Of a DNA stretch of 64,000 bases, positions 5,718 through 50,276 are shown one piece after another (within the stretch, counting starts at the first letter, position 1; each line of letters starts with the position of its first letter). The position numbers were made by a program, and so were the translations under genes. This stretch comes from Tubulanus polymorphus (lineage: Eukaryota > Animalia > Nemertea). A model generated the notes under the pieces. The model searched no databases. It was not told the DNA's origin and worked only from the letters and a program-made list of their open reading frames with translations. The DNA lies in NCBI RefSeq assembly GCF_964204645.1, contig NC_134030.1, positions 20,978,210 through 21,042,209 of the forward strand. The letters run 5' to 3'.

Positions 5718-8700
5718 ATGGATCGACTGAGAGCGCTGTTTATAGCGTCGCTGATCGTCTGGCGAGTTAACATCGCACACGCTGATCCGTCTGACTCCGT
5801 GACGGTCAGTTCGTCTTGTAACAACACTTGGTACCCCGTCGATTCTACGTCCGGTTACATCGTTTCACCGAATTACCCGTCGTTTACGCGCGGTGTTGAA
5901 TGTCGTTGCTTCGTCAACAGCTCTTTACCGGGAACTTTCAACATCGAACTATACTACGACATCGAGCCGTCGATATTCTGTAGTGATAACTACCTTCTCG
6001 TCGGTGAGTCCGATAACAGATTCTGCGGTGATGGAAAACATGAAATCCGCCGTAACGATTCGATCGCGTTGATGTTTAGAAGTAACGTCGATGGTGCGCG
6101 GGGTAGTCGGGTTTATGTCACATATCGCTATGAAAGGAACCGATTGAGAATCAGTCATCGCTGTAATAGTTACAATTTTCGAGTGAATGAATTGAAAACA
6201 TCGACTGGATACAAATTTGCGATGTCACTATATGGCGGATGCCCGATATTTCTAGAATTCAGGGGCCCCCCGGATGGTTTAGCGATGAATTTGACATTAG
6301 TAGATTTTGAGCTGAGATGCTTCGTTTACGATTTATGTGTCACTACTGCAGAATCGAGTTTTCGAATCTATGACGGTTGGAACACCAGCACTGAACCAAT
6401 AGCGATTATGGGTAAACAACGTGGACAGCAGCCGTCATCATTTTATACTAAAACCAACAAAGCCATTATCAGTTTGCTTCGAGGCCATCGAGTTACAACA
6501 CAACTGTCAGTTCAGGTGTATAGAATATCTGATTGGAACGTCTCTAATCCGTTAATTCTAATCTCTAATAACGAGTCTGGAGTGCTCATTCCTGATGACA
6601 ACAGTTTACACGTAATAACTCGATCAAAACTCTTACACTGCTGGTCTATCACAGTGCAGGTGTTACAGTACGTCGTCTTCAACTGGACACGTGATCTCAG
6701 CACAACCGGTGACGTCATCGGTGTATATAAACTAGAAGGGTTACGCGTTGTAGGAACTGATATTTTACTCGGTTACAACTACCTGGAATCATTGAGTGTT
6801 AAAACTGACGGCTTTCTCGTCATACTGTGCGTTTTGATAAAGCCAGGTGTTTTACAATCGAATGTAAAGATTGAATTTGAACCGAAATCTATTTCTATAT
6901 TAGACGTACAAGTCCGCAAACACAGGGTGAGTAAAAATATTTATTTATCTATTTATTTATTTATTTATTTATTTCAGAAATAAATTGCAACAATGTGTAC
7001 AATGTTATTGTTAGTACATAATGTTGTAATATAAAACTGGGGTTTCAGAAAAAGCAAGGCTTGTATAAACTGAAACCCTGAAAAGGAATGTTAAATATAT
7101 AAAATGTAGTAGTTGGCTAATAAACTGCTGTTTCAAGTTAACTGCGATAAATACGAGATTTACGAGAAAATACACTAAATAAATATAAAGCAGCTTAAGA
7201 AAGATCAGCAAAAGAGGACAATCAATTAATAAGTGGATATATAATGGCGTTTCATATTTGATTTGAAAATATTCAAACTTTTACTGGTTTTTATTGCATG
7301 ACTAATTTGATTCCAAAGTTTTGGACCCTTTACTCTCAATGAAAACTTTTTAACATTAGTATGGTAATGACTCAAACGAAGGTTAGTCCTCGATCTGGTA
7401 TGATGATTATGAATTGATGCATTTAACTCAAAAAGATCAGCGAACGTGCGAGGTAGAAGGTTGTGGGAATGACAATACACAAACTGCCCAACAAGAAGAT
7501 TGTTTATATCATGGAGTTTTAAGATCTGAGTGGCTTTAAATAACGGGCCTGTATGTTCTAGGTAGTAACTTTTGGTGATGATTCTTATGACTCTTTTTTG
7601 AAGTTTGAATAACTTACCTAGAGCAGATTCGGAGTTGTTGCCCCAAACAATATTGCAATAAAATAGGTGAGGGTAGATAAGGCTGTAATACAGTTGTCTT
7701 AGTACATTACATGGTAAAAGTTTTGATAATTTGTAGATGATACCAATATTTTTGGCTACCGTCGTTGAGATAATACTTATGTGTTTTTTCCAGTTTAGTT
7801 TTTCATCAATTTGAACGCCTAAGAATTTTGTGTCTTGGACCCTGGAAAGGGGTTTACCATATATAGACAAATTCATTTGAATATTACAAGGCCTTCTATT
7901 AAAAACAATGTAATACGTTTTTTTAAGATTTAACGATAATTTGTTTGCTTTAAACCAATCTACAAGTTTAGATAATTCTGTGTTTATAATGAGTTCAAGA
8001 TGGCTCGGATTTGAGTGGCTTTTGAAAATATTGGAATCATCAGCAAACAACACATACTGGAAAATTGGAGAAGCATTAACGTAATCATTTATGTATAGTA
8101 GAAATAGAATTGGGCCTAAGACAGAACCTTGTGGCACTCCGAGACTAATTGGGCTAAGAGAAGAAGTATGTTTATCAATAACAACTGCCTGTTTTCTGTC
8201 CGACAAGTAACTTTTAAACAACAAAAGAGGTAAGCCTCTGATACCATAGTGATCCAATTTGTTAAATAATATTTCGTGATCTATAGTATCAAAGGCTTTT
8301 GACGAGTCTAGGAATATTCCAACTGTAGTCTCACCTTTATCCATACTTTCCGTAATTTTCTCAGAAATAGTTGCAACTGCTAGGGACGTAGAATAGTGTT
8401 TTCTGAAACCAAACTGATACTCACTGAGAATTCCATATTTGTCTAGAAAACTAGATAAACGAGTAAATATTATTTTTTCTAGAATTTTGCTAAAGCACGT
8501 GAGTAGTGAAATAGGCCTATAATTACTGAAAATATCGTCTTCTCCCGATTTGTACAAAGGTTTTACCCTGGCAATTTTTAAAGCATTAGGAACAACACCC
8601 GTAACCATACTGCGATTAGATACATGAGCTAACGGAACAGAAATCAGATCAATGACTTGTTTGATGACACGTTGGCTTCTGTCATCATGACTACAACTAT

Positions 8701-11700
8701 CTTTGAGTTTGAAAGCTTTGGCTATATTTTGGATTTCGAGACTGCTAGCCGGTAAAAAGAATAAATTTTCGGCAAGAGGATGTCCAAGATAGAAGCTGGG
8801 ATCATGTTGGGAGGGTGGTATGTCGTGAGCAAGTGACCAATATTTGTATAATAGTTGTTAAATCCGTTACTAATATCTGCAGGGCGACTAAGCGTGGTTG
8901 AATTTGTTTTAAAGACTGAGGGGTATGAAGCTCTATTACAAGTGGTAATTATTATTAAGCTAAATTGAATGTAAAATAGCATGCGAGTCAAAACCTTATC
9001 GAAATAACAAATATCAATTTTGAACTAATTTTCATGTAAATCTCAAATGATTGACGAAATACCAAAACTTAAATTGCATCAAAAATGGAAACGAAATTCC
9101 GTGCAGCCACTCCTATCTATTATTTAGATGTCTTTCATCCGATGATGTTTAACAGATAACCATATGATATTATGGGACATAACAAACTTCAAACTGATCA
9201 TTGAAAATTAATTGTTATTTCTTACCATTACAAATTATTGATATTTTAGGTAGACCGTGATAGGTTGCCATCGTTAAACCCAGTTCCTATTTCTAAGAGG
9301 AGGTTTAAGTATAGCGTATTCAAGTATGAATTCGAATGGAAAGTTGAATTCTATGACACCGATCTGGAATTAGCGGTTCTGTCTGTGAATTGTGAAAATG
9401 CTGGATTCTATATATTTGATGGTGGTCATTTCACGGCTAGACGATACGGTCCGTATTGTCCCGGTTTATCGGGTTATCGACGAAGTGTCGTCAGTCTGAT
9501 TACATCAGGCGGTCCGGTGATGATACTAGGCTATTCAATCAACAGTCAAAGCCGGAACAAGGGTCAATTGAGGTCGCGTCTGACTGACTGTGACGGCTAC
9601 GCGTTACGGGAAGGAGAATACAGCGTTACAATGCCGCTGACGTCACGTTGTTTCATGGTTACTCCCGAGAATCGGGGCAATCCATTAAATCATGATATCA
9701 AAATAATATCATCGCATGAATATGAATTAAACACGTGTTTGCCTGATTTCATACGTTCATTTGAGGCGTGTAATTATTATTTTCCTATCAACAGACAGCG
9801 CCTCAATAACAGTCTCGTACTGCACACTGTTACAATAAGGGATCCGCAGTTGTTCATAAGACGCCCGTACATCATTGAATTGATGCGTCTTTGTCAAACA
9901 ACGGACAGACGTAACAGACAGTTTGACGAGTGGGAGCGAGATAAAAGCTACTGTGGAATCTTACAGTCGCCGAACTATCCGGCTTCACCTGGAACTACAG
10001 ATGAAACGATTAGATACGAACTCCAGTTCTTTTGGAATACAGCCCCCATACGGTTTTACAGATTCATTATAAAAGATATGGAAACAACGCCGTGCGTCAA
10101 ACGATCCAGAGGTGCTATGGACACCATATTATTCATCCAGATTATAACCGAGATTAAATACAGAGGCGAGACAATACACGAAATAAAGTTATGTGAAACA
10201 TATGGCACAGTAGGATTACAATTCTATAGTCTAATTAGCAGTTCTATCTTGTTCGAAATAAAAAACAAAATACCGAAATTCCGCATTCAATACATTTTTG
10301 AGAAACAGTTTCTGATGAAACAGCGCGATATCGTCTGTAAATCAGGATTTCTAGATTCGGGAGTTTCATGCGTGAAATACATCAGAGATAGACGTCTGAA
10401 TTGGGAGAACGCTGAAATGTATTGTCAACAGAAATACGGAGGACATCTACTCAGTATCAACTCTGAACATGAAATGATTTCTATTAAAAGATTATTTGCT
10501 AAACAACTTCTTCTAGATGGATATTTACAGAAAACACTAGTAGTGATGATCGGTTTAAAACTACAGGTAACAATAGATAAATGCCGTTCCTAAACAGGAT
10601 AGGTATTATTTTTATTCAATTTGAATCTCGAAGTATTTTTATACTCCTTCTAAAAACAGGAAAGATGATCTGAATTGCAAGTTGAGTCTTAATCAAAATT
10701 GTTTATTTTTTTCTAGCCTAATCTGATAAAAATATTTCAATGAATGAAACTAGATTTCATTTTTAAACAGAATGATGGTTATTACACATGGACAGATGGG
10801 AAACCATTGAGCTACGCAGAGTGGTTTAAACCTGCTATGATAAACGAAACGATACCAGAAGTTATTCAAGGATTGATATCTCCTCTACGAAAACAACCGA
10901 TAAATGACGTCAATATGCCGTGTACGGCGATGATACTGAATAATCCACGAGGATCAGCGAACTGGGTTCGATTCCCGTGTCAAATCGAGGAGATTCACAC
11001 GAGTTTTATGTGTGGATTCGATGAAGTTGATGTTGGAGAAAAACAGGAAAATACAACTAACACCAGCAGCAAAAATGAAACAAATACAATAATGTTTAAG
11101 TTTGATGATATTCAGAGAAACAATTCATTTTGTAGACGAGGTTGGCTTGGTATAGCTGGACAGTGTTATCAGATACTGACAGACTGGACAAACAAAAATG
11201 GTTTGGATATCAGAAGAGCGAGGGAAATGTGTCGTGAAATCCACGGAGAAATAACTCATCACGAATATTACATCGTTAAAAACATAATTGAAACATTGCA
11301 CTATAGATACCAGTATGGCGCTATACTGACCTCTGATAACAGAATTATAAAGCCAATAATCACTAGAGATGACATCACTCATACACATATAGTTAAATGG
11401 ATGATACAACAGTTTGATAATGTCACAGATGTAGCGCATTCCGTGCTATGTTCCTATAATGTAACTGGTGAAGAGTTGGCTTCTATAAGCGGTTGTAAAT
11501 CGTGGCAGTTTAAATGTAACGATCAAAGATGTATCAGTGACCATCGCGTATGTGATACCAGAAACGACTGTCAACACGATGAAGATGAAGTCGATTGTTC
11601 GGGTTCAAACTTACAAAGTCAGTTCCACTGTTCAGATGGACGGGTTATATCAATAAGTGGATTCTGTGATTTCATTAAGGATTGTTTGGATGGTTCTGAT

Positions 11701-14007
11701 GAGAACTCGTGTATTCATCCCCCGTGTTTGCCCCAACAATTCCGATGTACTAGTGGTCAATGTGTCAGTAAGTATAAAAGATGCGACGGAGACACTGATT
11801 GTAAAGACGGCTCGGATGAAATGGATTGCACCTCTCAACTGTGTCAGGGGTTTCTGTGTAACAGTGGCGACTGTATCAGTTCTCAGTTATATCAGGATGG
11901 TGTCGTGGATTGTAGTGGAAACCTCGAAGAAGATGAATTAGTAACAAATGCGAATATTACAGTGAATCCTACAGTTCATTGTAATGATTTGAACCAATGT
12001 ACGACTAACTTCACAAATCTCTGCACGGAATCTGATGAACAAAGATGTTCTTTCGATTCTCCTCATTGTTATTCTAGACGTGATAGATGTATTTTAGAAA
12101 GAATGTCGAATAGTTACCCAGTTTGTAGAAATCTTGAGCATATATTGAAATGTGAAAAATTTGATTGTCCAGCTGGTACTGTAAAATGTCCAGCATCGTA
12201 CTGTATACCGATGGGACAGGTGTGCGATGGTCGATCAGATTGTCCTAATTCAGAAGACGAGCGAAACTGCAAGACGTTGTCATGTCCCGGCATGTTCAAA
12301 TGTGGCCAGGAAAACCGATGTGTACCACAATCTGAAGTTTGTGATGGTGTTGTTAATTGTAAACATACCACTGATGACGAAGCTTTCTGTAACGTCACGT
12401 GTCCTGGATATTGTAAATGTCAAGGCCATTTGATCGACTGTGGAAATGGCGGTTTAACAAATATTACTGATCTTTTCTCGGCATCAAGTCGAGTTCTGAT
12501 TCTGTCGAATAACACAATTATCTTGGATATGACGACATTTTTTATTTATGTTTATCTTCGTTCGCTCAATATCTCCTTCAATAAGTTGTCTTATATTTTA
12601 CCAGACGCTTTCTCAAACCTGCATAATCTATATACGTTAGACCTGTCATATAACAACATAACATACTTATCTACAAACACATTCATTGGTTTGTATAGTT
12701 TGAAAGAGTTATTGATAACTAAAAATCCAATTAGTCACTTAGCGGACGATACATTTCAAGATTTGAAGTCTCTTAAAGATCTCGATCTTCACGGACTTTT
12801 CATATCTGTCCTTGGTCGAAATGTGTTCAGAGGTTTATCTACATTACAGTCGTTGAATATCAGCAGTAACAGAATTCATCATATTTCTCCATATGCTTTT
12901 TCGGGATTAGATGAACTTAGACTTATTGATATATCCAATAACTCTAAAATAATATCTACGGAAAAAGATATTTTCAACAATCTGACAACATTAGTCTCTT
13001 TAGCGTCTGATGCTTACAAATTTTGCTGCATGGCTCCGAATGTCGACCAGTGTCTTCCTGAAGCAGATCAATTTTCGTCCTGTTCTGATCTGATGGGTAA
13101 CACGGCCCTCAGAGCTATCATCTGGGTCATCTCCGCATTCAGTTTCTTTCTGAACAGTATCGTCATTTTATTCCGTGTTCGATCATTTCAACTTTCCTAC
13201 CCTGAAAAGCATAACACATATTCTGACATCCTCATCATTAATATCGCAGCTTGTGATTTTCTGATGTCGATGTATTTGTTTCTGATCGCGGGAGCGGATT
13301 ACGTCTATAAAGGAGTTTATTTCCTGCATTCTGAAACTTGGACGGACAGTTCGTTGTGTAGTTTCGCTGGAGTTTTGGTGACTATTTCCTGTGAAGGCTC
13401 ATTGACGTTTCTATTCATTCTAACTCGATATAGATTTTCAAAGATAGTTAATCCATTTTCTGGAAGCCCGATTACATCTCCGAAATGCGTATCCATTATC
13501 TGTTGCCTATGTTGGTTATCTATCAGCACTATTTCTATAATACCGCTGTCACAATCATCTTATTTCGGCATCAAATTCTATGGTACTACTGGAATTTGTT
13601 TACCTATGAATTTGATATCAATTGATGTCCACGCCTGGCAATACTCATTCGCTATATTTGCCGTGTTTAACTCGGTCGTACTTGCTACAATAATGATGAC
13701 GTATGCACAGATGTATAGACTCGTATCTGGAAGCAGGTCCGGCTCGGGTAGAGCTGATCCTACCGAATTGGTTCTGGCGCGTAGGAGTTTAGTGATAAAT
13801 CTGTGTAATTCATTTTGCTGGTTACCGATAATTATCGTCCAGTTTTGCGCTGTATTGCGAGTAGAAATACCGAACCAAGTGGCGGCTTGGTTGGCGGTAC
13901 TTTTCCTACCGATCAACTCGTCACTGAATCCACTTCTTTACACCATCCTCACTATTGATGTCAAATCAATTCGGGCTAGAAATAAACGGGTTTGGAGAAC
14001 TCGTTGA
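5718..14007 (+). CDS. GRL101-like: GRL101-like GPCR copy A (CUB-CTL-LDLa-LRR-7TM), 3 exons, ~1920 aa
   Basis: Exons 5718-6926 (GTGAGT donor), 9250-10566, 10771-14007; both introns phase 0 and frames join. Signal peptide MDRLRALFIASLIVWRVNIAHA; CUB motifs (SGYIVSPNYP, FRIYDG, GPYC, CGILQSPNYP); C-type lectin (WENAEMYC..GGHLLSI..MIGL..WTDG); LDLa (CDGDTDCKDGSDE etc.); LRRs (LDLSYNNI); hinge DQFSSCSDL; TM motifs CWLP, NSSLNPLLY. Confidence 0.92.
6937..8955 (-). mobile_element. 5'-truncated CR1/L2-group LINE inserted antisense in intron 1 of copy A
   Basis: ORF 7226-8608: YRPISLL, QFGFR, SKAFDT, GVPQGSVLGPILFLLYIND, LFADD, KFLGV; frameshifted upstream piece (ISNGFNNYYTNIG, ~8830-8950); (TAAA)n tail at 6937-6973; absent from intron 1 of B, C, D. 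Confidence 0.92.
7226..8608 (-). CDS. LINE reverse transcriptase domain (partial ORF2)
   Basis: RT motifs as above; no endonuclease domain, upstream frame broken. Confidence 0.85.
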   Translation of the reverse strand: MVTGVVPNALKIARVKPLYKSGEDDIFSNYRPISLLTCFSKILEKIIFTRLSSFLDKYGILSEYQFGFRKHYSTSLAVATISEKITESMDKGETTVGIFLDSSKAFDTIDHEILFNKLDHYGIRGLPLLLFKSYLSDRKQAVVIDKHTSSLSPISLGVPQGSVLGPILFLLYINDYVNASPIFQYVLFADDSNIFKSHSNPSHLELIINTELSKLVDWFKANKLSLNLKKTYYIVFNRRPCNIQMNLSIYGKPLSRVQDTKFLGVQIDEKLNWKKHISIISTTVAKNIGIIYKLSKLLPCNVLRQLYYSLIYPHLFYCNIVWGNNSESALGKLFKLQKRVIRIITKSYYLEHTGPLFKATQILKLHDINNLLVGQFVYCHSHNLLPRTFADLFELNASIHNHHTRSRTNLRLSHYHTNVKKFSLRVKGPKLWNQISHAIKTSKSLNIFKSNMKRHYISTY

Positions 14008-19337: not shown

Positions 19338-22300
19338 ATGGATCGACTGAGAGCGCTGTTTATAGCGTCGCTGATCGTCTGGCGAGTTAACATCGCACAC
19401 GCTGATCTGTCTGACTCTGTGACGGTCAGTTCGTCTTGTAACAACACTTGGTACCCCGTCGATTCTACGTCCGGTTACATCGTTTCACCGAATTACCCGT
19501 CGTTGACGCGCGGTGTTGAATGTCGTTGGTTCGTCAACAGCTCTTTACCGGGAACTTTCAACATTAAACTATACTACGACATCGAGCCGTCGATATTCTG
19601 TAGTGATAACTACCTTCTCGTCGGTGAGTCCGATAACAGATTCTGCGGTGAAGGAAAACATGAAATCCGCCGTAACGATTCGATCTCGTTGATGTTTAGA
19701 AGTAACGTCGATGGAGCGCGGGGTAGTCGGGTTTATGTTACATATCGCTATGAACGGAGCCGATTGAGAATCAGTCACCGCTGCCACAAATACCAGTTTC
19801 GAGTGAATGAATTGAAAACATCGACTGGATACAAATTCGCGATGTTACTACGTTACGGATGTCAGATATTTCTGGAATGGGAGGCCCTCTCGAATGATTC
19901 AGCGATGAATTTGACGCTTTTAGATTTCGACCTAAAACGCACGTCACTTTATACTAATGTCGATGCAGCGTCGGGTTTTCGAATCTATGACGGTTGGAAC
20001 ACCAGCAGTGAACCGATAGCGATTATGGGTGAACAACGTGGACATCCACCTTCATCGTTTTATACTAAAACTAACAAAGCCATTTTCACTTCGCAACGAG
20101 GCCGACGCGTTAGCACACAACTATCAGTTCAGGTGTATAGAATATCTGATTGGAACGTCTCTAATCCGTTAATTCAAATCTCTAATAACGAGTCTGGAGT
20201 GCTCATTCCTGATGACAACAGTTTACACGTAATAACTCGATCAAAACACTTACACTGCTGGTCTATCACAGTGCAGGTGTTACAGTACGTCGTCTTCAAC
20301 TGGACACGTGATCTCAGCACATCCGGTGACGTCATTGGTGTATATAAACTAGAAGGGTTACGCGTTGTAGGAACTGATATTTTACTCGGTTACAACTACC
20401 TGGAATCACTGAGTGTTAAATCTGAAGGCTTTCTCGTCATACTGTGCGTTTTAATAAGTCCGAACATCACAGAATCGAATGTACGAATCGAATTCAGAAC
20501 GGGATCAATTTTGAAAAAGTTACGCTTCACTAAACGCGTCGTAAGTGCTGATATAGTATTCAAACTTGGAAATTTGCACTTGTTATCATCCAATAACCTA
20601 CCCGATGCAAACTCCCTGTAATGATAGTAGAATGTTCATGATTAAAGCAAACATTACCATTTCACCAGTTCCCGGCGCAATACATGTTATAATCACATTT
20701 CAACAAGTTAAAGATATTCACTAGAATAATGATGAAGCGATTTATAGTGCATTGTACTTTCATGTATTTCAGATATGGCGCAAGCTGGAGACGATTTCAT
20801 TGTCACATGCGTCGCTTCTTGATAGTCTTCCACCAAAGACTTCGATCTATCGAATAAATGCGTATCAATTCAAATGGAAAGTTGAAATCTATGACATCGA
20901 TCTGGAATTAGCGGTGCTGTCTGTGAATTGTGAAAATGCTGGATTTTATATATTTGATGGTGGTAATTTCGCGGCTAGACGATACGGTCCGTATTGTCCC
21001 GGTTTAGCGGGTTATCGACGAAGTGTCGTCAGTCTGATTACATCAGGCGGTCCGGTGATCATAGTAGGGTATTTCCTTGATAATCACAGCAACCTGAAGG
21101 GTAAGGGCAGTTTGATCTTACGTCCGTCTGACTGTGACGGCTACACTCTACGGGATGGAGAACACCACGTTAGAGTGACGTCACGCTGTTTAAGCATTAC
21201 GCCTGAAAATAGACATGTTCCATCAAATGTAATTTACATATTATCACGACACGAATATCATTTGAGCTCATGTAATCCTAGTTATACGATCCCCAACTCG
21301 TGGTGTAAACAGTTCATGCCATTCAGTATTCAGCGCCTGAATAACAGTCTCATACTGCACACTGTGACGATGCGGTATTCGCGGTTGTTTGTGATATACA
21401 ATTACATCATTGAATTGAGACTTGTTTGTCAATCAGTGAAAAAACATAGCACACCATATACCTGGGAAAACGAGTGTGGAATCATGCAGTCACCAAATTA
21501 TCCAGGATCAGCGAAGAAATCTGATATCACTTTGAAATACTATCTCCTCACCGGACCAAACAGAACTCGAATTCAGTTTTACCGATTTATTGTAAAACAC
21601 TTGGAAGCGACGCCGTGCATTAAACAATTCTCATCTGATTTAGACTCCGTTTTATTCGTGGAGAATGTAATTTACGACGGAGACGTGGGGTCAACTAGGT
21701 ATGAAATTAGATTATGTAATGCATTCACTGAACTAGGAGTTATATTTCACAGTCTAGGTTGGGCAATCCAGTTTGAGGTGAAAAACAAAATACCAAAATT
21801 CCGCATACAATACATTTTACAGAAGCAGTTACGAACGAAAAGGCGCGATGATATGTGTAAATCAGGATTTCTAGATTCGGGAATTTCCTGCGTCAAATAC
21901 ATCAGAGATGAACGTCTGAATTGTGAGAACGCTGAAATGTACTGTCAACAGAAATACGGAGGACATCTTCTCAGTATCAACTCTGAACATGAAATGATTT
22001 CTGTTAAGTCATTATTTGCTACGGAACTTCTACGACAGGCATATTCACAGAAAGCGCTCATAATGATGATAGGATTGAAATTGCAGGTAATTTCCAAACA
22101 TATTTCCAACAAAGATTCCCTTGCCGAAAATCTGTCAATATTCCATCATAATTTTTTACCTAAATTTCAGCAAAATACTTATTATTACACGTGGACTGAT
22201 GGCAAACCATTGAGCTACACAGAGTGGTATGGACCTACAAATAACGAAACGATACCAGAAGTTATTCAAGGATTGATATCTCCTCTACGTAAACAACCGA

Positions 22301-25300
22301 TAAATGACGCCAATATGCCGTGTACGGCGATGATACTGAATAATCCACGAGGATCAGCGAACTGGGTTCGATTCCCTTGCGGAATTGAAGAGGTTCACAC
22401 GAGTTTCATTTGCGAATCGGAAAAAATGAATATCGAAAATACAACGGTTTACAAATTCAATTCAACGAAAAACGACACAATTTCGATGCGAGAAAATATG
22501 ATTTATGATGCAATTTACTTTAGCTGGAGCTGTACGGTTGGTTGGGTAAGCATAAATAAAAGGTGCTATCAAATACTGACGGACTGGAACAAACATCGAG
22601 GTTTAGATATGAAAACTGCGACAGAGATGTGTCATGGCATCGATGGTGAAATAGAAACTGTGATAAACGGTTACACAGAAATAGAAACTTTGAACCTAGT
22701 AAGAATATTTCAATATCGACATCAATATAGCTCGATACTGACAATGACTTACAATGGCGGACTGCAAGTTATAAAACCAATAATCACTAGAGATGATATC
22801 ACTTATATTCACTCAGTAAAATGGTTGATGAAACAGTTTGATAATGTCACAGATGTAGCGCATTCCGTGCTATGTTCCTACAATGTAACTGGTGAAGAGT
22901 TGGCTTCTATAAGCGGTTGTAAATCGTGGCAGTTTCAATGTAACGATCAAAGATGTATCAGCGACCATCGCGTATGTGATACCAGAAACGACTGTCAACA
23001 CGGTGAAGATGAACTCGACTGTTCGGGTTCAAACTTACAGTTCCACTGTTCAGATGGACGGGTTATATCAATAAGTGGATTCTGTGATTTCATTAAGGAT
23101 TGTTTGGATGGTTCTGATGAGAACTCGTGTTTTCATCCCCCGTGTTTGCCCCAACAATTCCGATGTACTAGTGGTCAATGTGTCAGTAAGTATAAAAGAT
23201 GCGACGGAGACACTGATTGTAAAGACGGCTCGGATGAAATGAGATGCACCTCTCAACTGTGTCAGGGGTTCCTGTGTAACAGTGGGGACTGTATCAGTTC
23301 TCAGTTGTATCAGGATGGAGTCGTGGATTGTAGTGGAAACCTAGAAGAAGATGAATTAGTAACAAATGCGAATATTACAGTGAATCCTACAGTTCATTGT
23401 AATGATTTGAACCAATGTACGACTAATTTCACAAATCTTTGTACAAAATCTGATGAACAAAGATGTTCTTTCGATTCTCCTCATTGTTATTCTAGACGTC
23501 ATAGATGTATATTAGAAAGAATGTCGAATAGTTACCCAGTTTGTAGGAATCTTCAGCATATATTGAAATGTGAAAAATTTGATTGTCCAGCTGGTACTGT
23601 AAAATGTCCAGCATCGTACTGTATACCGATGGGACAGGTGTGCGATGGTCGATCAGATTGTCCTAATTCAGAAGACGAGCGAAACTGCGAGACTTTGTCA
23701 TGTCCCGGCATGTTCAAATGTGGCCAGGAAAACCGATGTATACCTCAATCTGAGGTTTGTGATGGTGTTGTTAATTGTAAACATACCACTGATGACGAAG
23801 CTTTCTGTAACGTCACGTGTCCTGGATATTGTAAATGTCAAGGCAATTTGATCGACTGTGGAAATGGCGGTTTAACAAATATTACTGATCTTTTCTCGGC
23901 ATCAACTCGAGTTTTGATTCTGTCGAATAACACAATTATCTTGGATTTGACGACATTTCTTCTACATGTTTATGTTCGTTTGCTCAACATCTCTTCTAAT
24001 AAATTGTCTTACATTTTAGCAAACGCTTTCTCAAACCTGCATAATCTACATACATTAGACCTTACATATAACAATATAACATACTTATCTACAAACACAT
24101 TCATTGGTTTGTACAGTTTGAAAGAGTTATTGATGACTGAAAATCCAATTAGTCACTTAGCGGACGATACATTTCAAGATTTGAAGTCTCTTAAACATCT
24201 CGATCTTCACGGACTTTTCATATCTCTTCTTGGTCGAAATGTATTCAGAGGTTTATCTACATTACAGTCGTTGAATATCAGCAGTAACAGAATTCATCAT
24301 ATTTCTACATATGCCTTTTCGGGATTAGATGAACTTAGAATCATTGATATAACTAATAACTCTAAAATAATATCAACGGAAAAAGATATTTTCAACAATC
24401 TTACATCATTAACCTCCCTAGTGTCTGATGCATACAAATTTTGCTGCATGGCTCCGAATGTTGAACACTGCCTTCCCGAAGCTGATCAATTTTCGTCCTG
24501 TTCTGATCTGATGGGTAACACAGCCCTCAGAGCTATCATCTGGGTCATCTCCGCATTCAGTTTCTTTCTGAACAGTATCGTCATTTTATTCCGTGTTCGA
24601 TCATTTCTACTTTCATCCTCCGAAAAGCGTAACACATCTTCTGACATCCTCATCATTAATATCTCAGCTTGTGATTTTCTGATGTCTATTTATCTGTTTC
24701 TGATCGCGGGAGCTGATTACGTTTATAAAGGAGTTTATTTCCTGCATTCTGAAACTTGGACGGACAGTTCATTGTGTAGTTTCGCTGGAGTTTTGGTGAC
24801 TATTTCCTGTGAAGGCTCATTGACGTTTCTATTCATTTTAACGCGTTATAGATTTTCAAAAATCGTCAATCCATTTTCTGGAAGCCCGATTACATCTCCG
24901 AAATGCGTATCCATTATATGTTGCGTATGTTGGTTATCTATAAACACTATTTCTATAATACCGCTGTCACAATCATCTTATTTCGGCAACAAATTCTATG
25001 GTACTACTGGAATTTGTTTACCTATGAATTTGATATCGATTGATGTCCACGCCTGGCAATATTCATTCGCTATATTTGCCGTGTTTAACTCGGTCCTACT
25101 TGCTACAATAATGATGACGTATGCACAGATGTATAGACTCGTATCTGGAAGCAGGTCCGGCTCGGGTAGAGCTGATCCTACCGAATTGATTCTGGCACGT
25201 AGGAGTTTAGTGATAAATCTGTGTAATGTATTTTGCTGGTTACCGATAATTACCGTTCAGTTTTGCGCTGTATTGCGAGTAGAAATACCGAACCAAGTGG

Positions 25301-25425
25301 CGGCTTGGTTGGCGGTACTTTTCCTACCGATCAACTCGTCACTGAATCCACTTCTTTACACCATCCTCACTATTGATGTTAAATCAATTCGGGCTAGAAA
25401 TAAACGGGTTTGGAGAACTCGTTGA
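19338..25425 (+). CDS. GRL101-like: GRL101-like GPCR copy B, 3 exons, ~1923 aa
   Basis: Exons 19338-20540 (GTAAGT), 20773-22086, 22171-25425; intron 2 is 84 nt and stop-free, which explains the 1557-aa ORF. Same domain order as A. Confidence 0.92.
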
Positions 25426-28003: not shown

Positions 28004-31000
28004 ATGGATCGACTGAGAGCGCTGTTTATAGCGTCGCTGATCGTCTGGCGAGTTAACATCGCACACGCTGATCTGTCTGACACTGTGACGGTCAGTTCGT
28101 CTTGTAACAACACTTGGTATCCAGTCGATTCTACGTCCGGTTACATCGTTTCACCGAGTTACCCGTCATTAACGCGCGGTGTTGAATGTCGTTGGTTCGT
28201 CAACAGCTCTTTACCGGGAACTTTCAACATCAAACTATTCTACGACATCGAGCCGTCAATATTCTGTAGTGATAACTACCTTCTCGTCAGTGAGTCCGAT
28301 AACAGATTCTGTGGAGAAGGAAAACATGAAATCCGCCGTAACGATTCGATCTCGTTGATGTTTAGAAGTAACGTCGATGGTGCGCGGGGTAGTCGGGTTT
28401 ATATCATATATCGTTATGAACGAAACCATTTGAAATTAATTCACAACTGCAGATTCACAATGAACAGATTACAAACATCGACAGGATACAGATTTAAAAT
28501 GTATTTATTTCGATGTAAATTGTATTTGGAATGGATCGAGATCCCGGATGGTTTTGCAATGAATTTGACGTTCATACAGATCGATTTCAGATTATTTCCT
28601 CGCACTCGTTCATTGACAACTGTTCAAATTTACGACGGATGGAACACCAGTGAACCTATAGCTGTTATACCAGAACAAACCGGGCATCCACCTTCATCAT
28701 TTTATACTAAAACTAACAAAGCCATTATTGATGATACACTTCCATCATCCTTTAAATCGCAACTATCAGTTCAGGTGTATAGAATATCTGATTGGAACGT
28801 CTCTAATCCGTTGATTCGAATCTCTAATAACGAGTCTGGAGTGTTCATTCCTGATGACAACAGTTTACACGTAATAACTCGATCAAAACACTTACACTGC
28901 TGGTCTATCACAGTGCAGGTGTTACAGTACGTCGTCTTCAACTGGACACGTGATCTCAGCGCATCCGGTGACGTCATTGTTGTATATAAACTAGAAGGGT
29001 TACGCGTTGTAGGAACTGATATTTTACTCGGTTACAACTACCTGGAATCACTGAGTGTTAAATCTGACGGCTTTCTCGTCATACTGTGCGTTTTAATAAG
29101 ACCAGGTGTTTTACAATCGAATGCAAAAATTGAATTTGAAGTGAAGTCTATTTCTATAGGAGACGTACAACTCCGCAAACGCAGGGTGAGTAAAAATGAT
29201 TTGCTCAATTAAATGTAACCCAGGATGAATTGAGTGTGATTAACTACTCAGCTTCATCTAGATTAAGTGTAACACATCTAAAACACAGAAAATTAAATTA
29301 AATAAGATATATTAATGATTAATGATTGATGAAATGTGATTTAGAAAAAGAGTTCATATTGCACTAATTACAGTTTTGAATATGGATTAATTAAATTCAA
29401 TTCTTTTGTGTTTTTTAGATTGAAAAGAATTCTTTTAATTAGAATGTGCCTTGTAATCAAACATAGAATAAAAGCAAACTAATAATGATTTAATTGAATC
29501 TGTAGAATTATTTCAAAAACGTTGCACAAATTTACTTCTAATTTCCCATACGGAAAAAACCCAATAATAAAAATTGCTCCCGTTGAAATCATTAAGCATT
29601 CGAATGTTCAGATTAAATCAAATGATGAATTATTCATTGGAAGAAATAAGATTGCTTTCAACATCACCTTTAAATAGATTAGGATCGATTTATGGAGATT
29701 TTAATGATCTGTTCATATTTTGTAGATATCTGGCTCTAGCGCCGGTCACAAGACGTCAAAGATGACAACATTAATGTATCGTATAAATACATACGAATTT
29801 AAACGGAAAGTTGATATCTATGAGAATAGATTAAAACTAACAGTTTTATCAGAGACGTGCGAGAGAGCTGGATTTTATATATATGATGGTGGTAATTTTA
29901 CAGCTAGACGCTATGGTCCGTATTGTCCCGGTTATAAATACGGTCGATCTGTCGTCAGCCTGATTACATCAGGAGGACCGGTTACTGTAGTAGGATACGC
30001 TTATAACAGCTTATCAGCGCCTCCTGCAGCTCTCAGATTCAATCCTACTGATTGTGACGGGTATGTTCTACATGAAGGAGAAAATCAGATCAATATGACG
30101 TCACACTGCCTGGTGATTACACCTGAAAACCGGCGCCTTCCTTTAGAAAACATTTATATATTATCAGAATATGAATATCAAATTGACGCATGTTATCCTG
30201 TGCAATACTTCAGCAAAACATGCGACAGGCAAATTAGTTTATCAAATCAGTTTCTCAATAACAGTTTCGTATTAAACGCTGTGAAATTGTTCGACAAATA
30301 TCAATTCTGGAATTATGGGTTAATAGTTAAACTACGTCGTAAATGTCAAGGAGTAAAAAACCCTACACAATCTAAATTTGGTGTTTCATATTTCCCGGAT
30401 AGGGATGAATGTGGAATCGTACAATCACCGAACTATCCGGGATCGGCGGGATATACTTCGAAATCTTCTTATTATCGCTTTGAAAACCCGATAATGAATA
30501 ATCGAATTCGACATTACAGATTTATAATCAAATTTATTCAGACTTTACCGTGCAATAAATTATCAAGATTTGACAAAGATCCAATTCTATTCAAACAACA
30601 AATACATGACTTTTACGATAATGGAGTAGTTATTTCAGGAAGCGACACCGAACATCAAACTAAAATGTGCGGAACTATTGCTAAACGTGGAAGTGTATTT
30701 CATAGTTTATGGGACAATGATTTGCAATTTGAGATAAAGGATCGCGTTCCCACATTTCAAATACAATATAATTTAGAAAAGTCGTTACCAATAAAACAGT
30801 TTGATAAAATCGGCTGTAAATCAGGATTTCTAGATTCGGGAATTTCCTGCATCAAATACATCAGAGATGAACGTCTGAATTGGGAGAACGCTGAAATGTA
30901 CTGTCAACAGAAATACGGAGGACATCTTCTCAGTATCAGCTCAGAACAGGAAATGATTTCTGTTAAGTCATTATTTGCTACGGAACTTCTACGACAGGCA

Positions 31001-34000
31001 TATTCACAGAAAGCGCTCATAATGATGATAGGATTGAAATTGCAGGTAATTTCCAGACATATTTTCCAACAAAGATTCCCTTGCCGAAAATCTGTAAATA
31101 TTCCATCATAATTTTTTACCTAAATTTCAGCAAAATACTTATTATTACACGTGGACTGATGGCAAACCATTGAGCTACACAGAGTGGTATGGACCTACAA
31201 ATAACGAAACGATACCAGAAGTTGTTCAAGGATTGATATCTCCTCTACGTAAACAACCGATAAATGACGCCAATATGCCGTGTACGGCGATGATACTGAA
31301 TAATCCACGAGGATCAGCGAACTGGGTTCGATTCCCTTGCGGAATTGAAGAGGTTCACACGAGTTTCATTTGCGAATCGGAAAAAATGAATATCGAAAAT
31401 ACAACGGTTTACAAATTCAATTCAACGAAAAACGACACAATTTCGATGCGAGAAAATATGATTTATGATGCAATTTACTTTAGCTGGAGCTGTACGGTTG
31501 GTTGGGTAAGCATAAATAAAAGGTGCTATCAAATACTGACGGACTGGAACAAACATCGAGGTTTAGATATGAAAACTGCGACAGAGATGTGTCATGGCAT
31601 CGATGGTGAAATAGAAACTGTGATAAACGGTTACACAGAAATAGAAACTTTGAACCTAGTAAGAACATTTCAATATCGACATCAATATAGCTCGATACTG
31701 ACAATGACTTACAATGGCGGACTGCAAGTTATAACACCAATAATCACTAGAGATGATATCACTTATATTCGCTCAGTAAAATGGTTGATGAAACAGTTCG
31801 ATAATGTCACAGATGTAGCGCATTCCGTGCTATGTTCCTACAATGTAACTGTTGAAGAGTTGGCTTCTATAAGCAGCTGTAAATCGTGGCAGTTTAAATG
31901 TAACGATCAAAGATGTATCAGCGACCATCGCGTATGTGATACCGGAAACGACTGTCAACACGGTGAAGATGAAGTCGATTGTTCGGGTTCAAACTTACAA
32001 AGTCAGTTCCACTGTTCAGATGGACGGGTTATATCAATAAGTGGATTCTGTGATTTCATTAAGGATTGTTTGGATGGTTCTGATGAGAACTCGTGTTTTC
32101 ATCCCCCGTGTTTGCCCCAACAATACCGCTGTACTAGTGGTCAATGTGTCAGTAAGTATAAACGATGCGACGGAGACACTGATTGTAAAGACGGCTCGGA
32201 TGAAATGAGATGCACCTCTCAACTGTGTCAGGGGTTCCTGTGTAACAGTGGGGACTGTATCAGTTCTCAGTTATATCAGGATGGTGCCGTGGATTGTAGT
32301 GGAAACCTAGAAGAAGATGAATTAGTAACAAATGCGAATATTACAGTGAATCCTACAGTTCATTGTAATGATTTGAACCAATGTGCGACTAATTTCACAA
32401 ATCTCTGCACGGAATCTGATGAACAAAGATGTTCTTTCGATTCTCCTCATTGTTATTCTAGACGTGATAGATGTATTTTAGAAAGAATGTCGAATAGTTA
32501 CCCAGTTTGTAGAAATCTTCAGCATATATTGAAATGTGAAAAATTTGATTGTCCAGCTGGTACTGTAAAATGTCCAGCATCGTACTGTATACCGATGGGA
32601 CAGGTGTGCGATGGTCGATCAGATTGTCCTAATTCTGAAGACGAGCGAAACAGCAAGACGTTGTCATGTCCCGGCATGTTCAAATGTGGCCAGGAAAACC
32701 GATGTATACCACAATCTGAAGTTTGTGATGGTGTTGTCAATTGTAAACTTACCACTGATGACGAAGCTTTCTGTAACGTCACGTGTCCTGGATATTGTAG
32801 ATGTCAAGGCCATTTGATCGACTGTGGAAATGGCGGTTTAACAAATATTACTGATCTTTTCTCGGCTTCAACTCGAGTTCTGAATCTGTCAAATAACACA
32901 ATTATCTTGGATATGACGACATTTTTTCCATATGTTTATCTTCGTTCGCTCAATATCTCCTTCAATAAGTTGTCTTACATTTTAGCAAACGCATTCTCAA
33001 ACCTGCATAATCTACATACATTAGACCTTACATATAACAATATAACATACTTATCTACAAACACATTCATTGGTTTGTATAGTTTGAAAGAGTTATTGAT
33101 AACTAAAAATCCAATTAGTCACTTAGAGGAAGATACATTTCAAGATTTGAAGTCTCTTAAAGATCTCGATCTTCACGGACTTTTCATATCTGTTCTTGGT
33201 CGAAATGTATTCAAAGGTTTATCTACATTACAGTCGTTGAATATCAGCAGTAACAGAATTCATCATATTTTTCTATATGCTTTTTCGGGATTAGATGAAC
33301 TTAGAATTATTGATATAACCAATAACTCTAAAATAATATCTACGGACAAAGATATTTTTAATAATCTGACAACATTAGTCTCTTTAGCGTCTGATGCCTA
33401 CAAATTTTGCTGCATGGCTCCGAATGTCGACCAGTGTCTCCCTGAAGCAGATCAATTTTCGTCCTGTTCTGATCTGATGGGTAACACGGCCCTCAGAGCT
33501 ATCATCTGGGTCATCTCCGCATTCAGTTTCTTTATGAACAGTATCGTCATTTTATTCCGTGTTCGATCATTTCAACTTTCATCCTCCGAAAAGCGTAACA
33601 CATCTTCTGACATCCTCATCATTAATATCGCAGCTTGTGATTTTCTGATGTCTATTTATCTGTTTCTGATCGCGGGAGCTGATTACGTTTATAAAGGAGT
33701 TTATTTCCTGCATTCTGAAACTTGGACGGACAGTTCATTGTGTAGTTTCGCTGGAGTTTTGGTGACTATTTCCTGTGAAGGCTCGCTGACGTTTCTATTC
33801 ATTTTAACGCGTTATAGATTTTCAAAAATCGTCAATCCATTTTCTGGAAGCCCGATTACATCTCCGAAATGCGTATCCATTATCTGTTGCGTATGTTGGT
33901 TATCTATAAACACTATTTCTATAATACCGCTGTCACAATCATCTTATTTCGGCAACAAATTCTATGGTACTACTGGAATTTGTTTACCTATGAATTTGAT

Positions 34001-34391
34001 ATCGATTGATGTCCACGCCTGGCAATATTCATTCGCTATATTTGCCGTGTTTAACTCGGTCCTACTTGCTACAATAATGATGACGTATGCACAGATGTAT
34101 AGACTCGTATCTGGAAGCAGGTCCGGCTCGGGTAGAGCTGATCCTACCGAATTGATTCTGGCACGTAGGAGTTTAGTGATAAATCTGTGTAATGTATTTT
34201 GCTGGTTACCGATAATTACCGTTCAGTTTTGCGCTGTATTGCGAGTAGAAATACCGAACCAAGTGGCGGCTTGGTTGGCGGTACTTTTCCTACCGATCAA
34301 CTCGTCACTGAATCCACTTCTTTACACCATCCTCACTATTGATGTTAATTCAATTCGGGCTAGAAATAAACGGGTTTGGAGAACTCGTTGA
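28004..34391 (+). CDS. GRL101-like: GRL101-like GPCR copy C, 3 exons, ~1920 aa (alternative in-frame ATG at 27989)
   Basis: Exons 28004-29185 (GTGAGT), 29726-31045, 31131-34391; phase-0 introns, frames join. Confidence 0.92.
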
Positions 34392-44184: not shown

Positions 44185-47100
44185 ATGGATCGACTGAGAG
44201 CGCTGTTTATAGCGTCGCTGATCGTCTGGCGAGTTAACATCGCACACGCTGATCTGTCTGACTCTGTGACGGTCAGTTCGTCTTGTAACAACACTTGGTA
44301 CCCCGTCGATTCTACGTCCGGTTACATCGTTTCACCGAATTACCCGTCGTTGACGCGCGGTGTTGAATGTCGTTGGTTCGTCAACAGCTCTTTACCGGGA
44401 ACTTTCAACATCAAACTATACTACGACATCGAGCCGTCGATATTCTGTAGTGATAACTACCTTCTCGTCGGTGAGTCCGATAACAGATTCTGCGGTGAAG
44501 GAAAACATGAAATCCGCCGTAACGATTCGATCTCGTTGATGTTTAGAAGTAACGTCGATGGTGCGCGGGGTAGTCGGGTTTATGTCACATATCGTTTTGA
44601 ACGAAGCCGATTGAGAATCAGTCACAACTGCCTGAGGTTCGGTTTTCGATTGAATGAAATGAAAACATCGACTGGATACAAATTCGCGATGTTACTACTT
44701 TCCAGATGTCGGATATTCCTAGAATGGGACGCCCTCTCGGATGGTTCAGCGATGAATTTGACGTTTTCAGATTTCGACCTAAAACTGAGGTTTAGTTGGA
44801 TTTATGTCGATCCAGCTTCGACTTTTCGAATCTATGGTGGTCGGAACACCAGAAGTAAACCGATAGCGCATATTGGTGAACAACGTGGACATCCACCTTC
44901 ATCATTTTACACTAAAACTAACAGAGCCATTATCACTTCGATAGCATACCAAAAAGTTACCTTCCAACTATTCGTTCAGGTATATAGAATATCTGATTGG
45001 AACGTCTCTAATCCGTTGATTGAAATCTCTAATAACGAGTCTGGAGTGCTCATTCCTGATGACAACAGTTTACACGTAATAACTCGATCAAAACACTTAC
45101 ACTGCTGGTCTATCACAGTGCAGGTGTTACAGTACGTCGTCTTCAACTGGACACGTGGTTTCAGCGCATCCGGTGACGTCATCGGTGTATATAAACTAGA
45201 AGGGTCACGCGTTGTAGGAACTGATATTTTACTCGGTTACAACTACCTGGAATCACTGAGTGTTAAATCTGACGGCTTTCTCGTCAAACTGTGCGTTATG
45301 ATGAGACCGAACATCACAGAATCGAATGTACGAATCGAATTCAGAACGGAATCAATTTTGAAAAAGTTACGCTTCACTAAACGCGTGGTAAGTGCTGATA
45401 AAGTATTCAAACTTGCAGATTTGCACTTGTTATCATCCAATAACCTACCCGATGCAAACTCCCTGTAATAATAGTAGAATGTTCATGATTAAAGCCAACA
45501 TTACCATTTCACAAGTTCCCGGCGCAATACATGTTATAATCACAAGTGATGTTTGTTATAGATATTCACTAGAATAATGATGAAGCGATTTATAATGCAT
45601 TGTACTTTCATGTATTTCAGATATTGCGCAAGCTGGAGACGATTTCATTGTCACATGCGTCGCTTCTTGATAGTCTTCCACCAAAGACTTCGATCTATCG
45701 AATAAATGCGTATAGATTCAAATGGAAAGTTGAAATCTATGACATCGATCTGGAATTAGCGGTTCAGTCTGCGAATTGTGAAAATGCTGGATTTTATATA
45801 TTTGATGGTGGTAATTTCACGGCTAGACGATACGGTCCGTATTGTCCCGGTTTAGCTGGTTATCGACGAAGTGTCGTCAGTCTGATTACATCAGGCGGTC
45901 CGGTGATCATAGTAGGCTATTGCCTTGATAATGACAGCAACTTGAAGGGTAAGGGCAGTTTGATCTTACGTCCGTCTGACTGCGACGGCTACACTCTACG
46001 GGAAGGAGAACACCACGTTAGAGTGACGTCACGCTGTTTAAGCATTACGCCTGAAAATAGACATGTTCCATCGAATGTAATTTACATATTATCACGACAC
46101 GAATATCATTTGAGCTCATGTAATCCTAGTTATACGATCCCTAACTCGAAGTGTAAACAGTTCATGTCTTTCAGTATTCAGCGCCTGAATAACAGTCTCA
46201 TACTGCACACTGTGACGATGAAGGATTCGCGATTGTTTGTGAAATACGATTACGTCATTGAATTGAGACTGGTTTGTCAATCAGTGAAAAAACATAGCAC
46301 ACCATATACCTGGGAAAACGAATGTGGAATCATGCAGTCACCAAATTATCCAGGATCAGCGAAGAAATCTGATATCACTTTGAAATACTATCTCGGCACC
46401 TTCCAAGGACACACAACTCGAATTCAGTTTTACCGATTTATTGTAAAACACTTGGAAACGACGCCGTGCATTAAACAATTTTTAAATGATTTAGACTCCG
46501 TTTTATTCGCGGAGGAAGTAAAATATGTCGGAGACGCGGGGTCAACTAGGTATGAAATTAGATTATGTAATGCATTCACTGAACTAGGAGTTATATTTCA
46601 CAGTCTAAATTGGGCAATCCAGTTTGAGGTGAAAAACAAAATACCAAAATTCCGCATACAATACATTTTACAGAAGCAGTTACGAACGAAAAGGCGCGAT
46701 GATATGTGTAAATCAGGATTTCTAGATTCGGGAATTTCCTGCGTCAAATACATCAGAGATGAACGTCTGAATTGGGAGAACGCTGAAATGTACTGTCAAC
46801 AGAAATACGGAGGACATCTTCTCAGTATCAGCTCAGAACAGGAAATGATTTCTGTTAAGTCATTATTTGCTACGGAACTTCTACGACAGGCATATTCACA
46901 GAAAGCGCTCATAATGATGATAGGATTGAAATTGCAGGTAATTTCCAGACATATTTTCCAACAAAGATTCCCTTGCCGAAAATCTGTAAATATTCCATCA
47001 TAATTTTTTACCTAAATTTCAGCAAAATACTTATTATTACACGTGGACTGATGGCAAACCATTGAGCTACACAGAGTGGTATGGACCTACAAATAACGAA

Positions 47101-50100: not shown

Positions 50101-50276
50101 TTACCGTTCAGTTTTGCGCTGTATTCCGAGTAGAAATACCGAACCAAGTGGCGGCTTGGTTGGCGGTACTTTTCCTACCGATCAACTCGTCACTGAATCC
50201 ACTTCTTTACACCATCCTCACTATTGATGTTAAATCAATTCGGGCTAGAAATAAACGGGTTTGGAGAACTCGTTGA
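44185..50276 (+). pseudogene. GRL101-like GPCR copy D, frameshifted (pseudogene or secreted truncated form)
   Basis: Exons 44185-45387, 45621-46937, 47023-50276; CGATTC|GAATTG at 47221-47232 lacks CCTTGCG (7 nt) present in B and C; stop at 47272-47274; the remaining 1001 codons are intact. Confidence 0.88.

What the first reader, a model, noticed from the sequence alone, without database searches (positions are those of the whole stretch)
19760..20122. Four CDR-like hypervariable loops in the second CUB-like domain of exon 1
Seen, in order A/B/C/D: loop 1 RCNSYN / RCHKYQ / NC / NCLRFG; loop 2 SLYGGCP / LLRYGCQ / YLFRCK / LLLSRCR; loop 3 RCFVYDLCVTTAESS / KRTSLYTNVDAASG / RLFPRTRSLTT / KLRFSWIYVDPAST; loop 4 SLLRGHRVTT / TSQRGRRVST / DDTLPSSFKS / TSIAYQKVTF. 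They sit between conserved frameworks (TSTGY, AMNLT, PSSFYTKTN, QVYRISDWN), and the ~140 aa before and ~105 aa after are almost invariant. B 19938-19958 vs D 44785-44805: all 7 codons change amino acid (11 of 21 nt) with no indel, although the B and D introns are nearly the same. Loops are rich in R, Y, F and W. Inference: a ligand-binding face under diversifying selection. Equivalent regions: A ~6140-6505, C ~28425-28762, D ~44610-44968.
Basis: partly seen in the sequence, partly recalled or inferred. Interest (0 to 1): 0.88.

Follow-up and report, generated by a model that had tools for sequence, protein, structure and literature searches.

The report
Variable CUB loops, ribbon-worm receptor family
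A ribbon worm carries well over a hundred copies of a giant GRL101-like cell-surface receptor gene, and in one outer domain the four loops that sit at the usual binding end differ from copy to copy while its neighbours stay alike, which looks like an inherited set of sensors for many different large molecules.

Summary
The window (almost certainly Tubulanus polymorphus) holds four tandem ~1,920-aa CUB/C-lectin/LDLa/LRR/7TM (GRL101-like) genes of a family with at least 132 scored copies. Across 87 paralogues the four segments are the variability peaks of exon 1. Domain 2 is a divergent CUB domain, and the segments map to its odd loops L1, L3, L5 and L9, the end that binds ligands in known CUBs; L7 is conserved. 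Selection is supported but weaker than it first looks. Standard site models give omega 2.4-2.7 at 11 codons, all in the four segments, beyond a recombination null. Letting synonymous rate vary cuts the test statistic from 175 to 9. Close pairs still show 119 nonsynonymous to 25 synonymous changes. Domain 2 also has threefold higher synonymous divergence than its neighbours, so the flanks are homogenised by conversion. R/Y/F/W enrichment holds only at the peak codons. 'CDR-like' is an analogy: the genes are complete and germline. Exon-2 domains vary too. Ligand and expression are untested. The scan noted this family before on other DNA; GRL101 expansions are published in snails.

The parts
19338..20540 (+). 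Copy B exon 1 coding part: signal peptide, CUB D1 (about 19437-19757), divergent CUB D2 (19758-20147), D3 (putative degenerate CUB, fold not shown)
   Evidence: ORF; Pfam CUB on D1; donor GTAAGT at 20541, phase 0; profile comparison
19779..19796 (+). Variable segment 1 = CUB loop L1 (B residues 148-153; peak codons 150, 152, 153)
19845..19865 (+). Variable segment 2 = CUB loop L3 (residues 170-176; peak codon 173, the most robust site)
19935..19976 (+). Variable segment 3 = end of strand 5 plus loop L5 (residues 200-213; peak codons 202, 205, 207; length 7-13 aa among copies)
20088..20117 (+). Variable segment 4 = loop L9 with flanking strand ends (residues 251-260; peak codons 252, 255, 257)
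20541..20772 (+). Copy B intron 1 (GT..AG, phase 0; predicted, no RNA support)
20773..22086 (+). Copy B exon 2: D4 (CUB-like by motifs only), D5 (fold unknown), D6 (CUB-like), first half of a C-type lectin domain; D4-D6 strongly diverged among copies
   Evidence: the AlphaFold model was uninformative
22171..25425 (+). Copy B exon 3: lectin end, LDLa repeats (6 pass Pfam), LRRs, hinge FSSCSDLM, rhodopsin-family 7TM; LDLa-to-7TM part nearly constant among neighbours
5718..14007 (+). Copy A (exons 5718-6926, 9250-10566, 10771-14007); reverse-transcriptase-like ORF in intron 1
28004..34391 (+). Copy C (exons 28004-29185, 29726-31045, 31131-34391)
44185..50276 (+). Copy D (exons 44185-45387, 45621-46937, 47023-50276): B-like up to about 46.7 kb, C-like (98-100%) after; 7-bp frameshifting deletion near 47226
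53554..54489 (+). 7TM-only fragment of a more distant paralogue

Best explanation
Each gene encodes a complete GRL101-like (type C2 LGR) receptor whose distal end is a string of CUB or CUB-like domains. Domain 2 is a CUB sandwich that has lost the Ca-binding residues and second disulfide, and presents loops L1, L3, L5 and L9 at one end as a variable binding surface. Shown: fold class, loop mapping, family size and mosaic history. Inferred: tandem duplication and unequal exchange multiply the genes; gene conversion homogenises the structural and signalling parts (D1, D3, LDLa-LRR-7TM); selection for distinct specificities keeps D2 and parts of D4-D6 from being homogenised and favours new amino acids in the loops, with omega about 1.5-2.5 at peak codons, by point changes, multi-base changes and loop swapping. 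The product is a germline repertoire of receptors with many specificities and a shared G-protein output. The ligands are most likely macromolecules of other organisms (microbes, parasites, prey or predator secretions), because variation lies on distal protein-binding loops and not in the 7TM. How binding so far from the membrane is relayed to the hinge and 7TM is not known.
For: Entropy peaks confined to four segments. D2 modelled at pLDDT about 80 with ten strands; top structural matches are CUBs (neuropilin-2 a1 Z 8.0, PCPE-1 Z 8.0, cubilin Z 7.9); profile match to CUB over the whole domain E 1.8e-5; language-model neighbours are CUB, 0.95. Odd loops form the ligand site in solved CUBs (PMC8051872). 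M8 vs M8a 2dL 133, M2a vs M1a 175, 11 of 11 sites in the segments; each of four blocks significant on its own tree (2dL 31-40); indel-free subsets without A-D give 18.1 and 5.3; recombination null 2-34. Close pairs chosen on framework distance: loops 119 N: 25 S (P 0.0025 vs neutral), framework 115: 103. Flanks: pS one third of D2, higher GC3 (0.51 and 0.47 vs 0.38), discordant trees, D a B/C mosaic. Only 6 of 106 exon-1 matches hold a stop.
Against: With free synonymous rate, pooled loop omega is 1.02 and the 11 sites give 1.3 (p 0.046). With site-wide rate classes 2dL drops to 8.8, inside the range of the recombination null, whereas data simulated with true omega 2.7 give about 140. Against framework dS the close-pair loop omega is only 1.1-1.9. 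One of three indel-free subsets shows nothing. CUB structural matches are tied with cupins and carbohydrate-binding modules at Z 7.5-8. No coordinates were available to measure a contiguous patch. No RNA, expression or ligand data.
Confidence: 0.65

Rival explanations
1. Old variants plus relaxed loops. The loops are simply tolerant surface loops (omega about 1) in a domain too diverged to be converted, while identical flanks keep converting each other. The contrast is a by-product of patchy conversion, with no continuing selection for novelty.
For: pS is equally high in D2 loops and framework (0.49 vs 0.48); free-synonymous-rate estimate omega 1.0; M1a with site rates (lnL -11424) fits better than M8 (-11453); odd loops are the most divergent in CUBs generally (PMC8051872). 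An earlier scan note (s1-487599) argued this.
Against: In recent duplicates the loops have no raised synonymous rate but about three times the framework's nonsynonymous rate. L7, also an exposed odd loop, has omega 0.19. The equivalent loops of CUB D1 are conserved. Something must have kept D2, D4-D6 divergent between two homogenised blocks only about 400 bp apart.
Confidence: 0.2
2. A self-identity code: D2 and D4-D6 variants bind each other or endogenous partners (neuronal self-avoidance, allorecognition, gamete recognition), as clustered protocadherin EC2-EC3 do.
For: Same evolutionary pattern as clustered protocadherins: diverse inner ectodomains under positive selection between converted ones (PMC1852091). 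Several domains vary together.
Against: A GPCR output and lectin/LDLa modules fit heterologous ligands better (inference). Recent, species-level amplification with broken copies looks more like birth-and-death against external agents. The comparable snail cluster is linked to parasite resistance (PMC12297450).
Confidence: 0.1
3. Antibody-like somatic diversification acts on these loops.
For: Multi-base codon changes are five times commoner in loops than in framework (43/1004 vs 23/2767 codons); hundreds of donors are available for conversion.
Against: Every copy is a complete gene with its own 7TM. All diversity seen is between genomic copies. Contigs of other samples cover B's loops 1-4 with 1-10 differences in 150-270 nt. 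No segment or signal structure seen.
Confidence: 0.03

Closest known systems
Biomphalaria sudanica SudRes2 GRL101-like cluster (PMC12297450)
   Same: Tandem cluster of CTL-LDLa-LRR-7TM receptors, haplotype-level gene gain and loss, under-annotated, candidate recognition role
   Different: 12 genes against at least 132 here; no CUB domains reported (the word does not occur in the paper's main text); no loop-level selection analysis among the passages read; there a resistance association exists, here none
Ampullariid (apple snail) GRL101 expansion (PMC6573481)
   Same: Lineage-specific tandem expansion (29-132 genes) of GRL101-type GPCRs
   Different: Expression in tentacles and palps shown there; no CUB/CTL variable ectodomain in the passages read; expression unknown here
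Lymnaea GRL101 / type C2 LGRs (10.1101/2021.04.15.440029; PMC6267866)
   Same: Multiple LDLa repeats, LRRs, hinge motif and rhodopsin-family 7TM
   Different: Single-copy, proposed insulin/IGF-like peptide receptor; here about 850 extra N-terminal residues, DRY acid replaced by Y or Q, long branch with unresolved placement
Clustered protocadherins (PMC1852091)
   Same: Domain-wise mosaic: converted, GC3-rich domains next to diverse domains under positive selection
   Different: Cadherin fold, shared constant exons, homophilic adhesion; here independent full-length GPCR genes with CUB loops
Ca2+-binding CUB domains (neuropilin, cubilin, PCPE-1, C1s, MASP; PMC8051872)
   Same: Fold; the odd-numbered loops are the binding end
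   Different: D2 lacks the Ca-ligand acids and second disulfide and varies the loops among paralogues; D1 keeps E83, D90, D125
Immunoglobulin CDRs
   Same: Variable loops of changing length on a conserved beta-sandwich
   Different: Different fold, four loops, germline gene-per-specificity, no rearrangement or hypermutation evidence

Membership tests
GRL101-like / type C2 LGR | Rhodopsin-family 7TM preceded by LRRs | tested here: met
   PF00001 E 7e-19, PF13855 E 6e-41
GRL101-like / type C2 LGR | Multiple LDLa repeats (one in RXFP type C1) | tested here: met
   six LDLa stretches pass Pfam
GRL101-like / type C2 LGR | Hinge motif of the FSSCxDL type before TM1 | tested here: met
   FSSCSDLM here, FSSCEDLM in Palaemon GRL101-like, a different motif in the Patiria RGP receptor
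GRL101 orthologue (strict) | 7TM groups with GRL101 to the exclusion of RXFP/LGR3/LGR4 | tested here: inconclusive
   long branch (1.47) in an unresolved polytomy; best named outside hits are GRL101-like at 36-37%
GRL101 orthologue (strict) | Insulin-like peptide ligand (itself only proposed) | not testable with these tools
   no binding data
CUB domain (D2) | Ten-strand jelly-roll with first disulfide | tested here: met
   C149 in 82 and C175 in 87 of 87 copies
CUB domain (D2) | Pfam PF00431 above cut-off | tested here: not met
   no Pfam family for B D2; A gives only a weak CUB-clan hit, E 0.017
Ca2+-binding CUB (D2) | Acidic Ca ligands in L5 and L9, second disulfide | tested here: not met
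   aligned positions are mostly R/K, P/S, L/T/S and no Cys pair
Antigen receptor with CDRs | Ig-V fold | tested here: not met
   fold searches return CUB and jelly-roll folds
Antigen receptor with CDRs | Somatic rearrangement or hypermutation | not testable with these tools
   no single-animal deep or RNA data; gene layout needs no rearrangement

The most novel reading that the evidence does not exclude
A germline, antibody-like repertoire built on CUB loops and wired directly to a GPCR: hundreds of receptors that recognise foreign macromolecules through combinable variable loops on several tandem CUB domains, serving as the ribbon worm's main variable immune or non-self recognition system.
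Probability: 0.3. Interest if true: 0.85.

Novelty: new variant of a known kind. Interest (0 to 1): 0.58.

Why it matters
GRL101-type expansions are known in snails, one of them tied to schistosome resistance, but their ligands and binding sites are unknown. This family points to a defined surface: four loops of one CUB domain that can be expressed alone as a 130-residue module and screened. If they confer specificity, CUB joins Ig, LRR and lectin folds as a scaffold for large variable-receptor repertoires, and the question whether GRL101 expansions are immune or chemosensory becomes directly testable. If not, it remains a clear case of patchy concerted evolution and a warning about site models on converted arrays.

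Tried and rejected
Profile search of 1.84 billion representatives with the exon-1 alignment found only generic multi-CUB proteins, matching mainly D1; exon-2 word search found nothing. Records of this genome may be left out, so this shows no annotated close relative in reach, not absence. AlphaFold of exon 2 failed (mean pLDDT 37); D1 and D3 were poorly modelled. No RNA run was identified and no splice joint was seen in the listed rows, so gene models rest on splice signals and frame. Rejected: misalignment as sole cause; assembly artefact for the copy number (read depth); block-scale recombination as sole cause of the standard test; loop-wide R/Y/F/W enrichment. Site models are my own GY94 implementation (M0 likelihood within about 2 units of IQ-TREE) with scaled, not re-optimised, branch lengths; the AU tests favour each domain's own tree by construction.

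Full report
Setting. The window is G000:C6:20978210-21042209 of a 268-Mb animal genome. A RefSeq protein of the ribbon worm Tubulanus polymorphus is the best database hit of the receptor core (64%) and matches another place in this genome at 99%, so the organism is almost certainly that species. The window holds four tandem three-exon genes, A to D, plus two 3' fragments. Copy B reads 19338-20540, 20773-22086, 22171-25425, both introns GT..AG in phase 0, about 1,923 aa. These models rest on splice signals and frame only; no RNA run was identified. Pfam gives CUB, weak C-type lectin, six LDLa, LRRs and 7tm_1. The exon-1 query scored 106 places (378 candidates) and the 7TM 132 places (497 candidates) on many contigs. 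In a second DNA sample read at about 7-fold single-copy depth (1,934 Mb over 268 Mb), conserved bins reach 900-1,460-fold, that is roughly 130-200 copies at 90% identity or more, so the amplification is not an assembly artefact.

The observation. The four segments, their frameworks and the B/D seven-codon example are as described. In 87 distinct intact exon-1 frames the entropy peaks fall at B residues 148-156, 170-174, 195-208 and 252-259; position 173 shows 16 amino acids. Each loop has 58-64 distinct sequences, several lengths, and there are 77 four-loop combinations; 51 pairs share one loop nearly unchanged while another differs by 35% or more. The compositional claim does not hold loop-wide (R+Y+F+W 0.18 vs 0.22 in D1), only at the peak codons (0.30 vs 0.17). 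Copy D has a 7-bp frameshifting deletion in exon 3 and is a mosaic, B-like to about 46.7 kb and 98-100% C-like beyond.

The fold. AlphaFold models residues 141-270 at pLDDT about 80 as ten strands. The best structural matches are CUB domains (neuropilin-2 a1 Z 8.0, PCPE-1 8.0, cubilin 7.9), though cupins and carbohydrate-binding modules tie within one Z unit. Two sequence-level tests favour CUB: a whole-domain profile alignment to CUBs cut from the hits (E 1.8e-5, C149 and C175 on the first disulfide) and language-model neighbours (CUB, 0.95). Counting strands, the variable segments are loops L1 (149-153), L3 (173-175), L5 (202-213) and L9 (253-255). In solved CUBs the odd loops point outward and form the Ca and ligand site (PMC8051872). 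Four variable loops all falling among the five odd ones of nine has chance 0.04. L7 is conserved (omega 0.19) and even loops give 0.51. D2 lacks the Ca-ligand acids and second disulfide that D1 retains.

Selection, the case for. D1 gives 14 and D3 1.6. Each quarter of D2 on its own tree gives 31-40. Indel-free subsets that exclude A-D give 18.1 (18 genes), 5.3 (12 genes) and nothing (8 genes). Ten null simulations with four blocks on different trees give 2-34. In 30 disjoint close pairs chosen on framework distance alone, loops show 119 nonsynonymous to 25 synonymous single-base changes (P 0.0025 against neutrality), the framework 115 to 103.

Selection, the case against. Synonymous divergence is about three times higher throughout D2 (pS 0.48-0.49) than in D1 (0.17) or D3 (0.13). 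With synonymous rate free, pooled loop omega is 1.02 and the 11 sites give 1.3 (p 0.046), only site 153 being significant alone among them. Adding site-wide rate classes cuts the D2 statistic to 8.8 with omega 1.6 and only Y173 supported, while data simulated under a true omega of 2.7 keep about 140. So the loops did not evolve by simple single-base positive selection along the whole tree. Multi-base codon changes are five times commoner in loops, and such changes and short conversion tracts inflate apparent synonymous rates on deep branches (inference). Measured against framework dS, recent loop omega is 1.1-1.9 overall and 1.5-2.5 at the peak codons. My reading is moderate, real diversifying selection on top of relaxed constraint and exchange.

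Mosaic history. Trees of D1, D2 and D3 disagree and their lengths are 2.6, 8.0 and 1.9. GC3 is 0.51, 0.38 and 0.47, the pattern taken as a conversion signature in protocadherins (PMC1852091). Among A-D the LDLa-LRR-7TM part has pN of 0.07 or less per window, whereas exon-2 domains of A, B and C mostly have pS 0.4-0.8. In 25-27 copies standard models also flag D4 (2dL 67, sites at the presumed L7 and L9, which also varies in length), D5 (16) and D6 (21); D4's M2a-M1a statistic falls from 73 to 7 with site rates. The variable surface thus spans several domains.

How it most likely works. Each gene gives one receptor with a particular set of CUB loops, far from the membrane, and a near-common signalling core with the LGR hinge motif, CWLP and NPLLY, but Y or Q in place of the DRY acid. 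Conversion keeps the core uniform; selection keeps and renews loop differences. Variation on distal protein-binding loops rather than in the 7TM points to macromolecular ligands. Immune, ecological (prey, predator) and self-identity roles remain open; external recognition is favoured by analogy only.

Comparison. GRL101-type expansions are published in apple snails (29-132 genes, sensory-organ expression; PMC6573481) and as a 12-gene CTL-LDLa-LRR cluster linked to schistosome resistance in Biomphalaria sudanica (PMC12297450). CUB-LDLa-LRR-7TM proteins also occur in unrelated assemblies and form a separate branch. I found no paper on this family or on hypervariable CUB loops in a GPCR; the library omits most subscription journals. 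The architecture meets the GRL101-like definition; strict orthology is unresolved. This scan has noted the same family in many other windows; those notes are unchecked leads, and the rival from s1-487599 was tested here and partly holds.

Verdict. Real feature, new variant of a known kind. Interest 0.58: a large, tractable, loop-mapped variable receptor repertoire, held back by model-dependent selection evidence and no expression or ligand data.

Noticed in passing
window 7TM exons (e.g. 24535-25425) and 53554-54489: The acidic residue of the DRY motif is replaced (YRF in A and B, same in C and D ORFs; QRY in the fragment and the RefSeq paralogue) while R3.50, CWLP and NPLLY are kept; may alter basal activity.
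   Followed up: partly
window ~47226: 7-bp deletion in exon 3 of copy D shifts the frame; D would give a truncated, membrane-free CUB plus partial lectin product, or is a pseudogene or assembly error.
   Followed up: partly
window 20773-21800 and equivalents: Exon-2 domains D4-D6 are as diverged as D2; D4 has a length-variable loop before its last strand. Read depth there falls to near single copy.
   Followed up: partly
window 20454-20540: The last 30 codons of exon 1 (B residues 373-401) are also variable; weak signal at residue 385 (2dL 7).
   Followed up: partly
window 22087-22170: Predicted intron 2 of copy B is 84 nt with no in-frame stop, so retention would keep the frame and insert 28 aa in the lectin domain; C and D have a stop there.
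   Followed up: no
window 38722-43407 (+): Apparently intact non-LTR retroelement (coiled-coil ORF1, endonuclease plus RT ORF2) between copies C and D.
   Followed up: partly
window 7226-8608 (-) and 901-2384 (-): RT-like ORF inside intron 1 of copy A (by inspection), and another RT-bearing element near the window start (Pfam RVT_1).
   Followed up: partly
window 16181-18357, 36560-38300, 54701-54976: 109-bp satellite arrays (20, 16 and 2.5 copies, about 95% alike) downstream of copies A, C and the fragment; they may travel with the duplication unit.
   Followed up: no
window 56617-56994 (-): Exon encoding a von Willebrand A domain of an unrelated gene.
   Followed up: no
L091:2810-8251: Intronless 1,813-aa CUB-LDLa-LRR-7TM gene in an unrelated sequencing run (SRR29525000), on a separate branch; similar architecture may have arisen more than once.
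   Followed up: partly
G000:C6 about 19.82-19.86 Mb vs 20.05-20.09 Mb (L027/L028, L029/L030): Pairs of identical exon-1 sequences 232 kb apart: a very recent segmental duplication or an uncollapsed haplotype.
   Followed up: no
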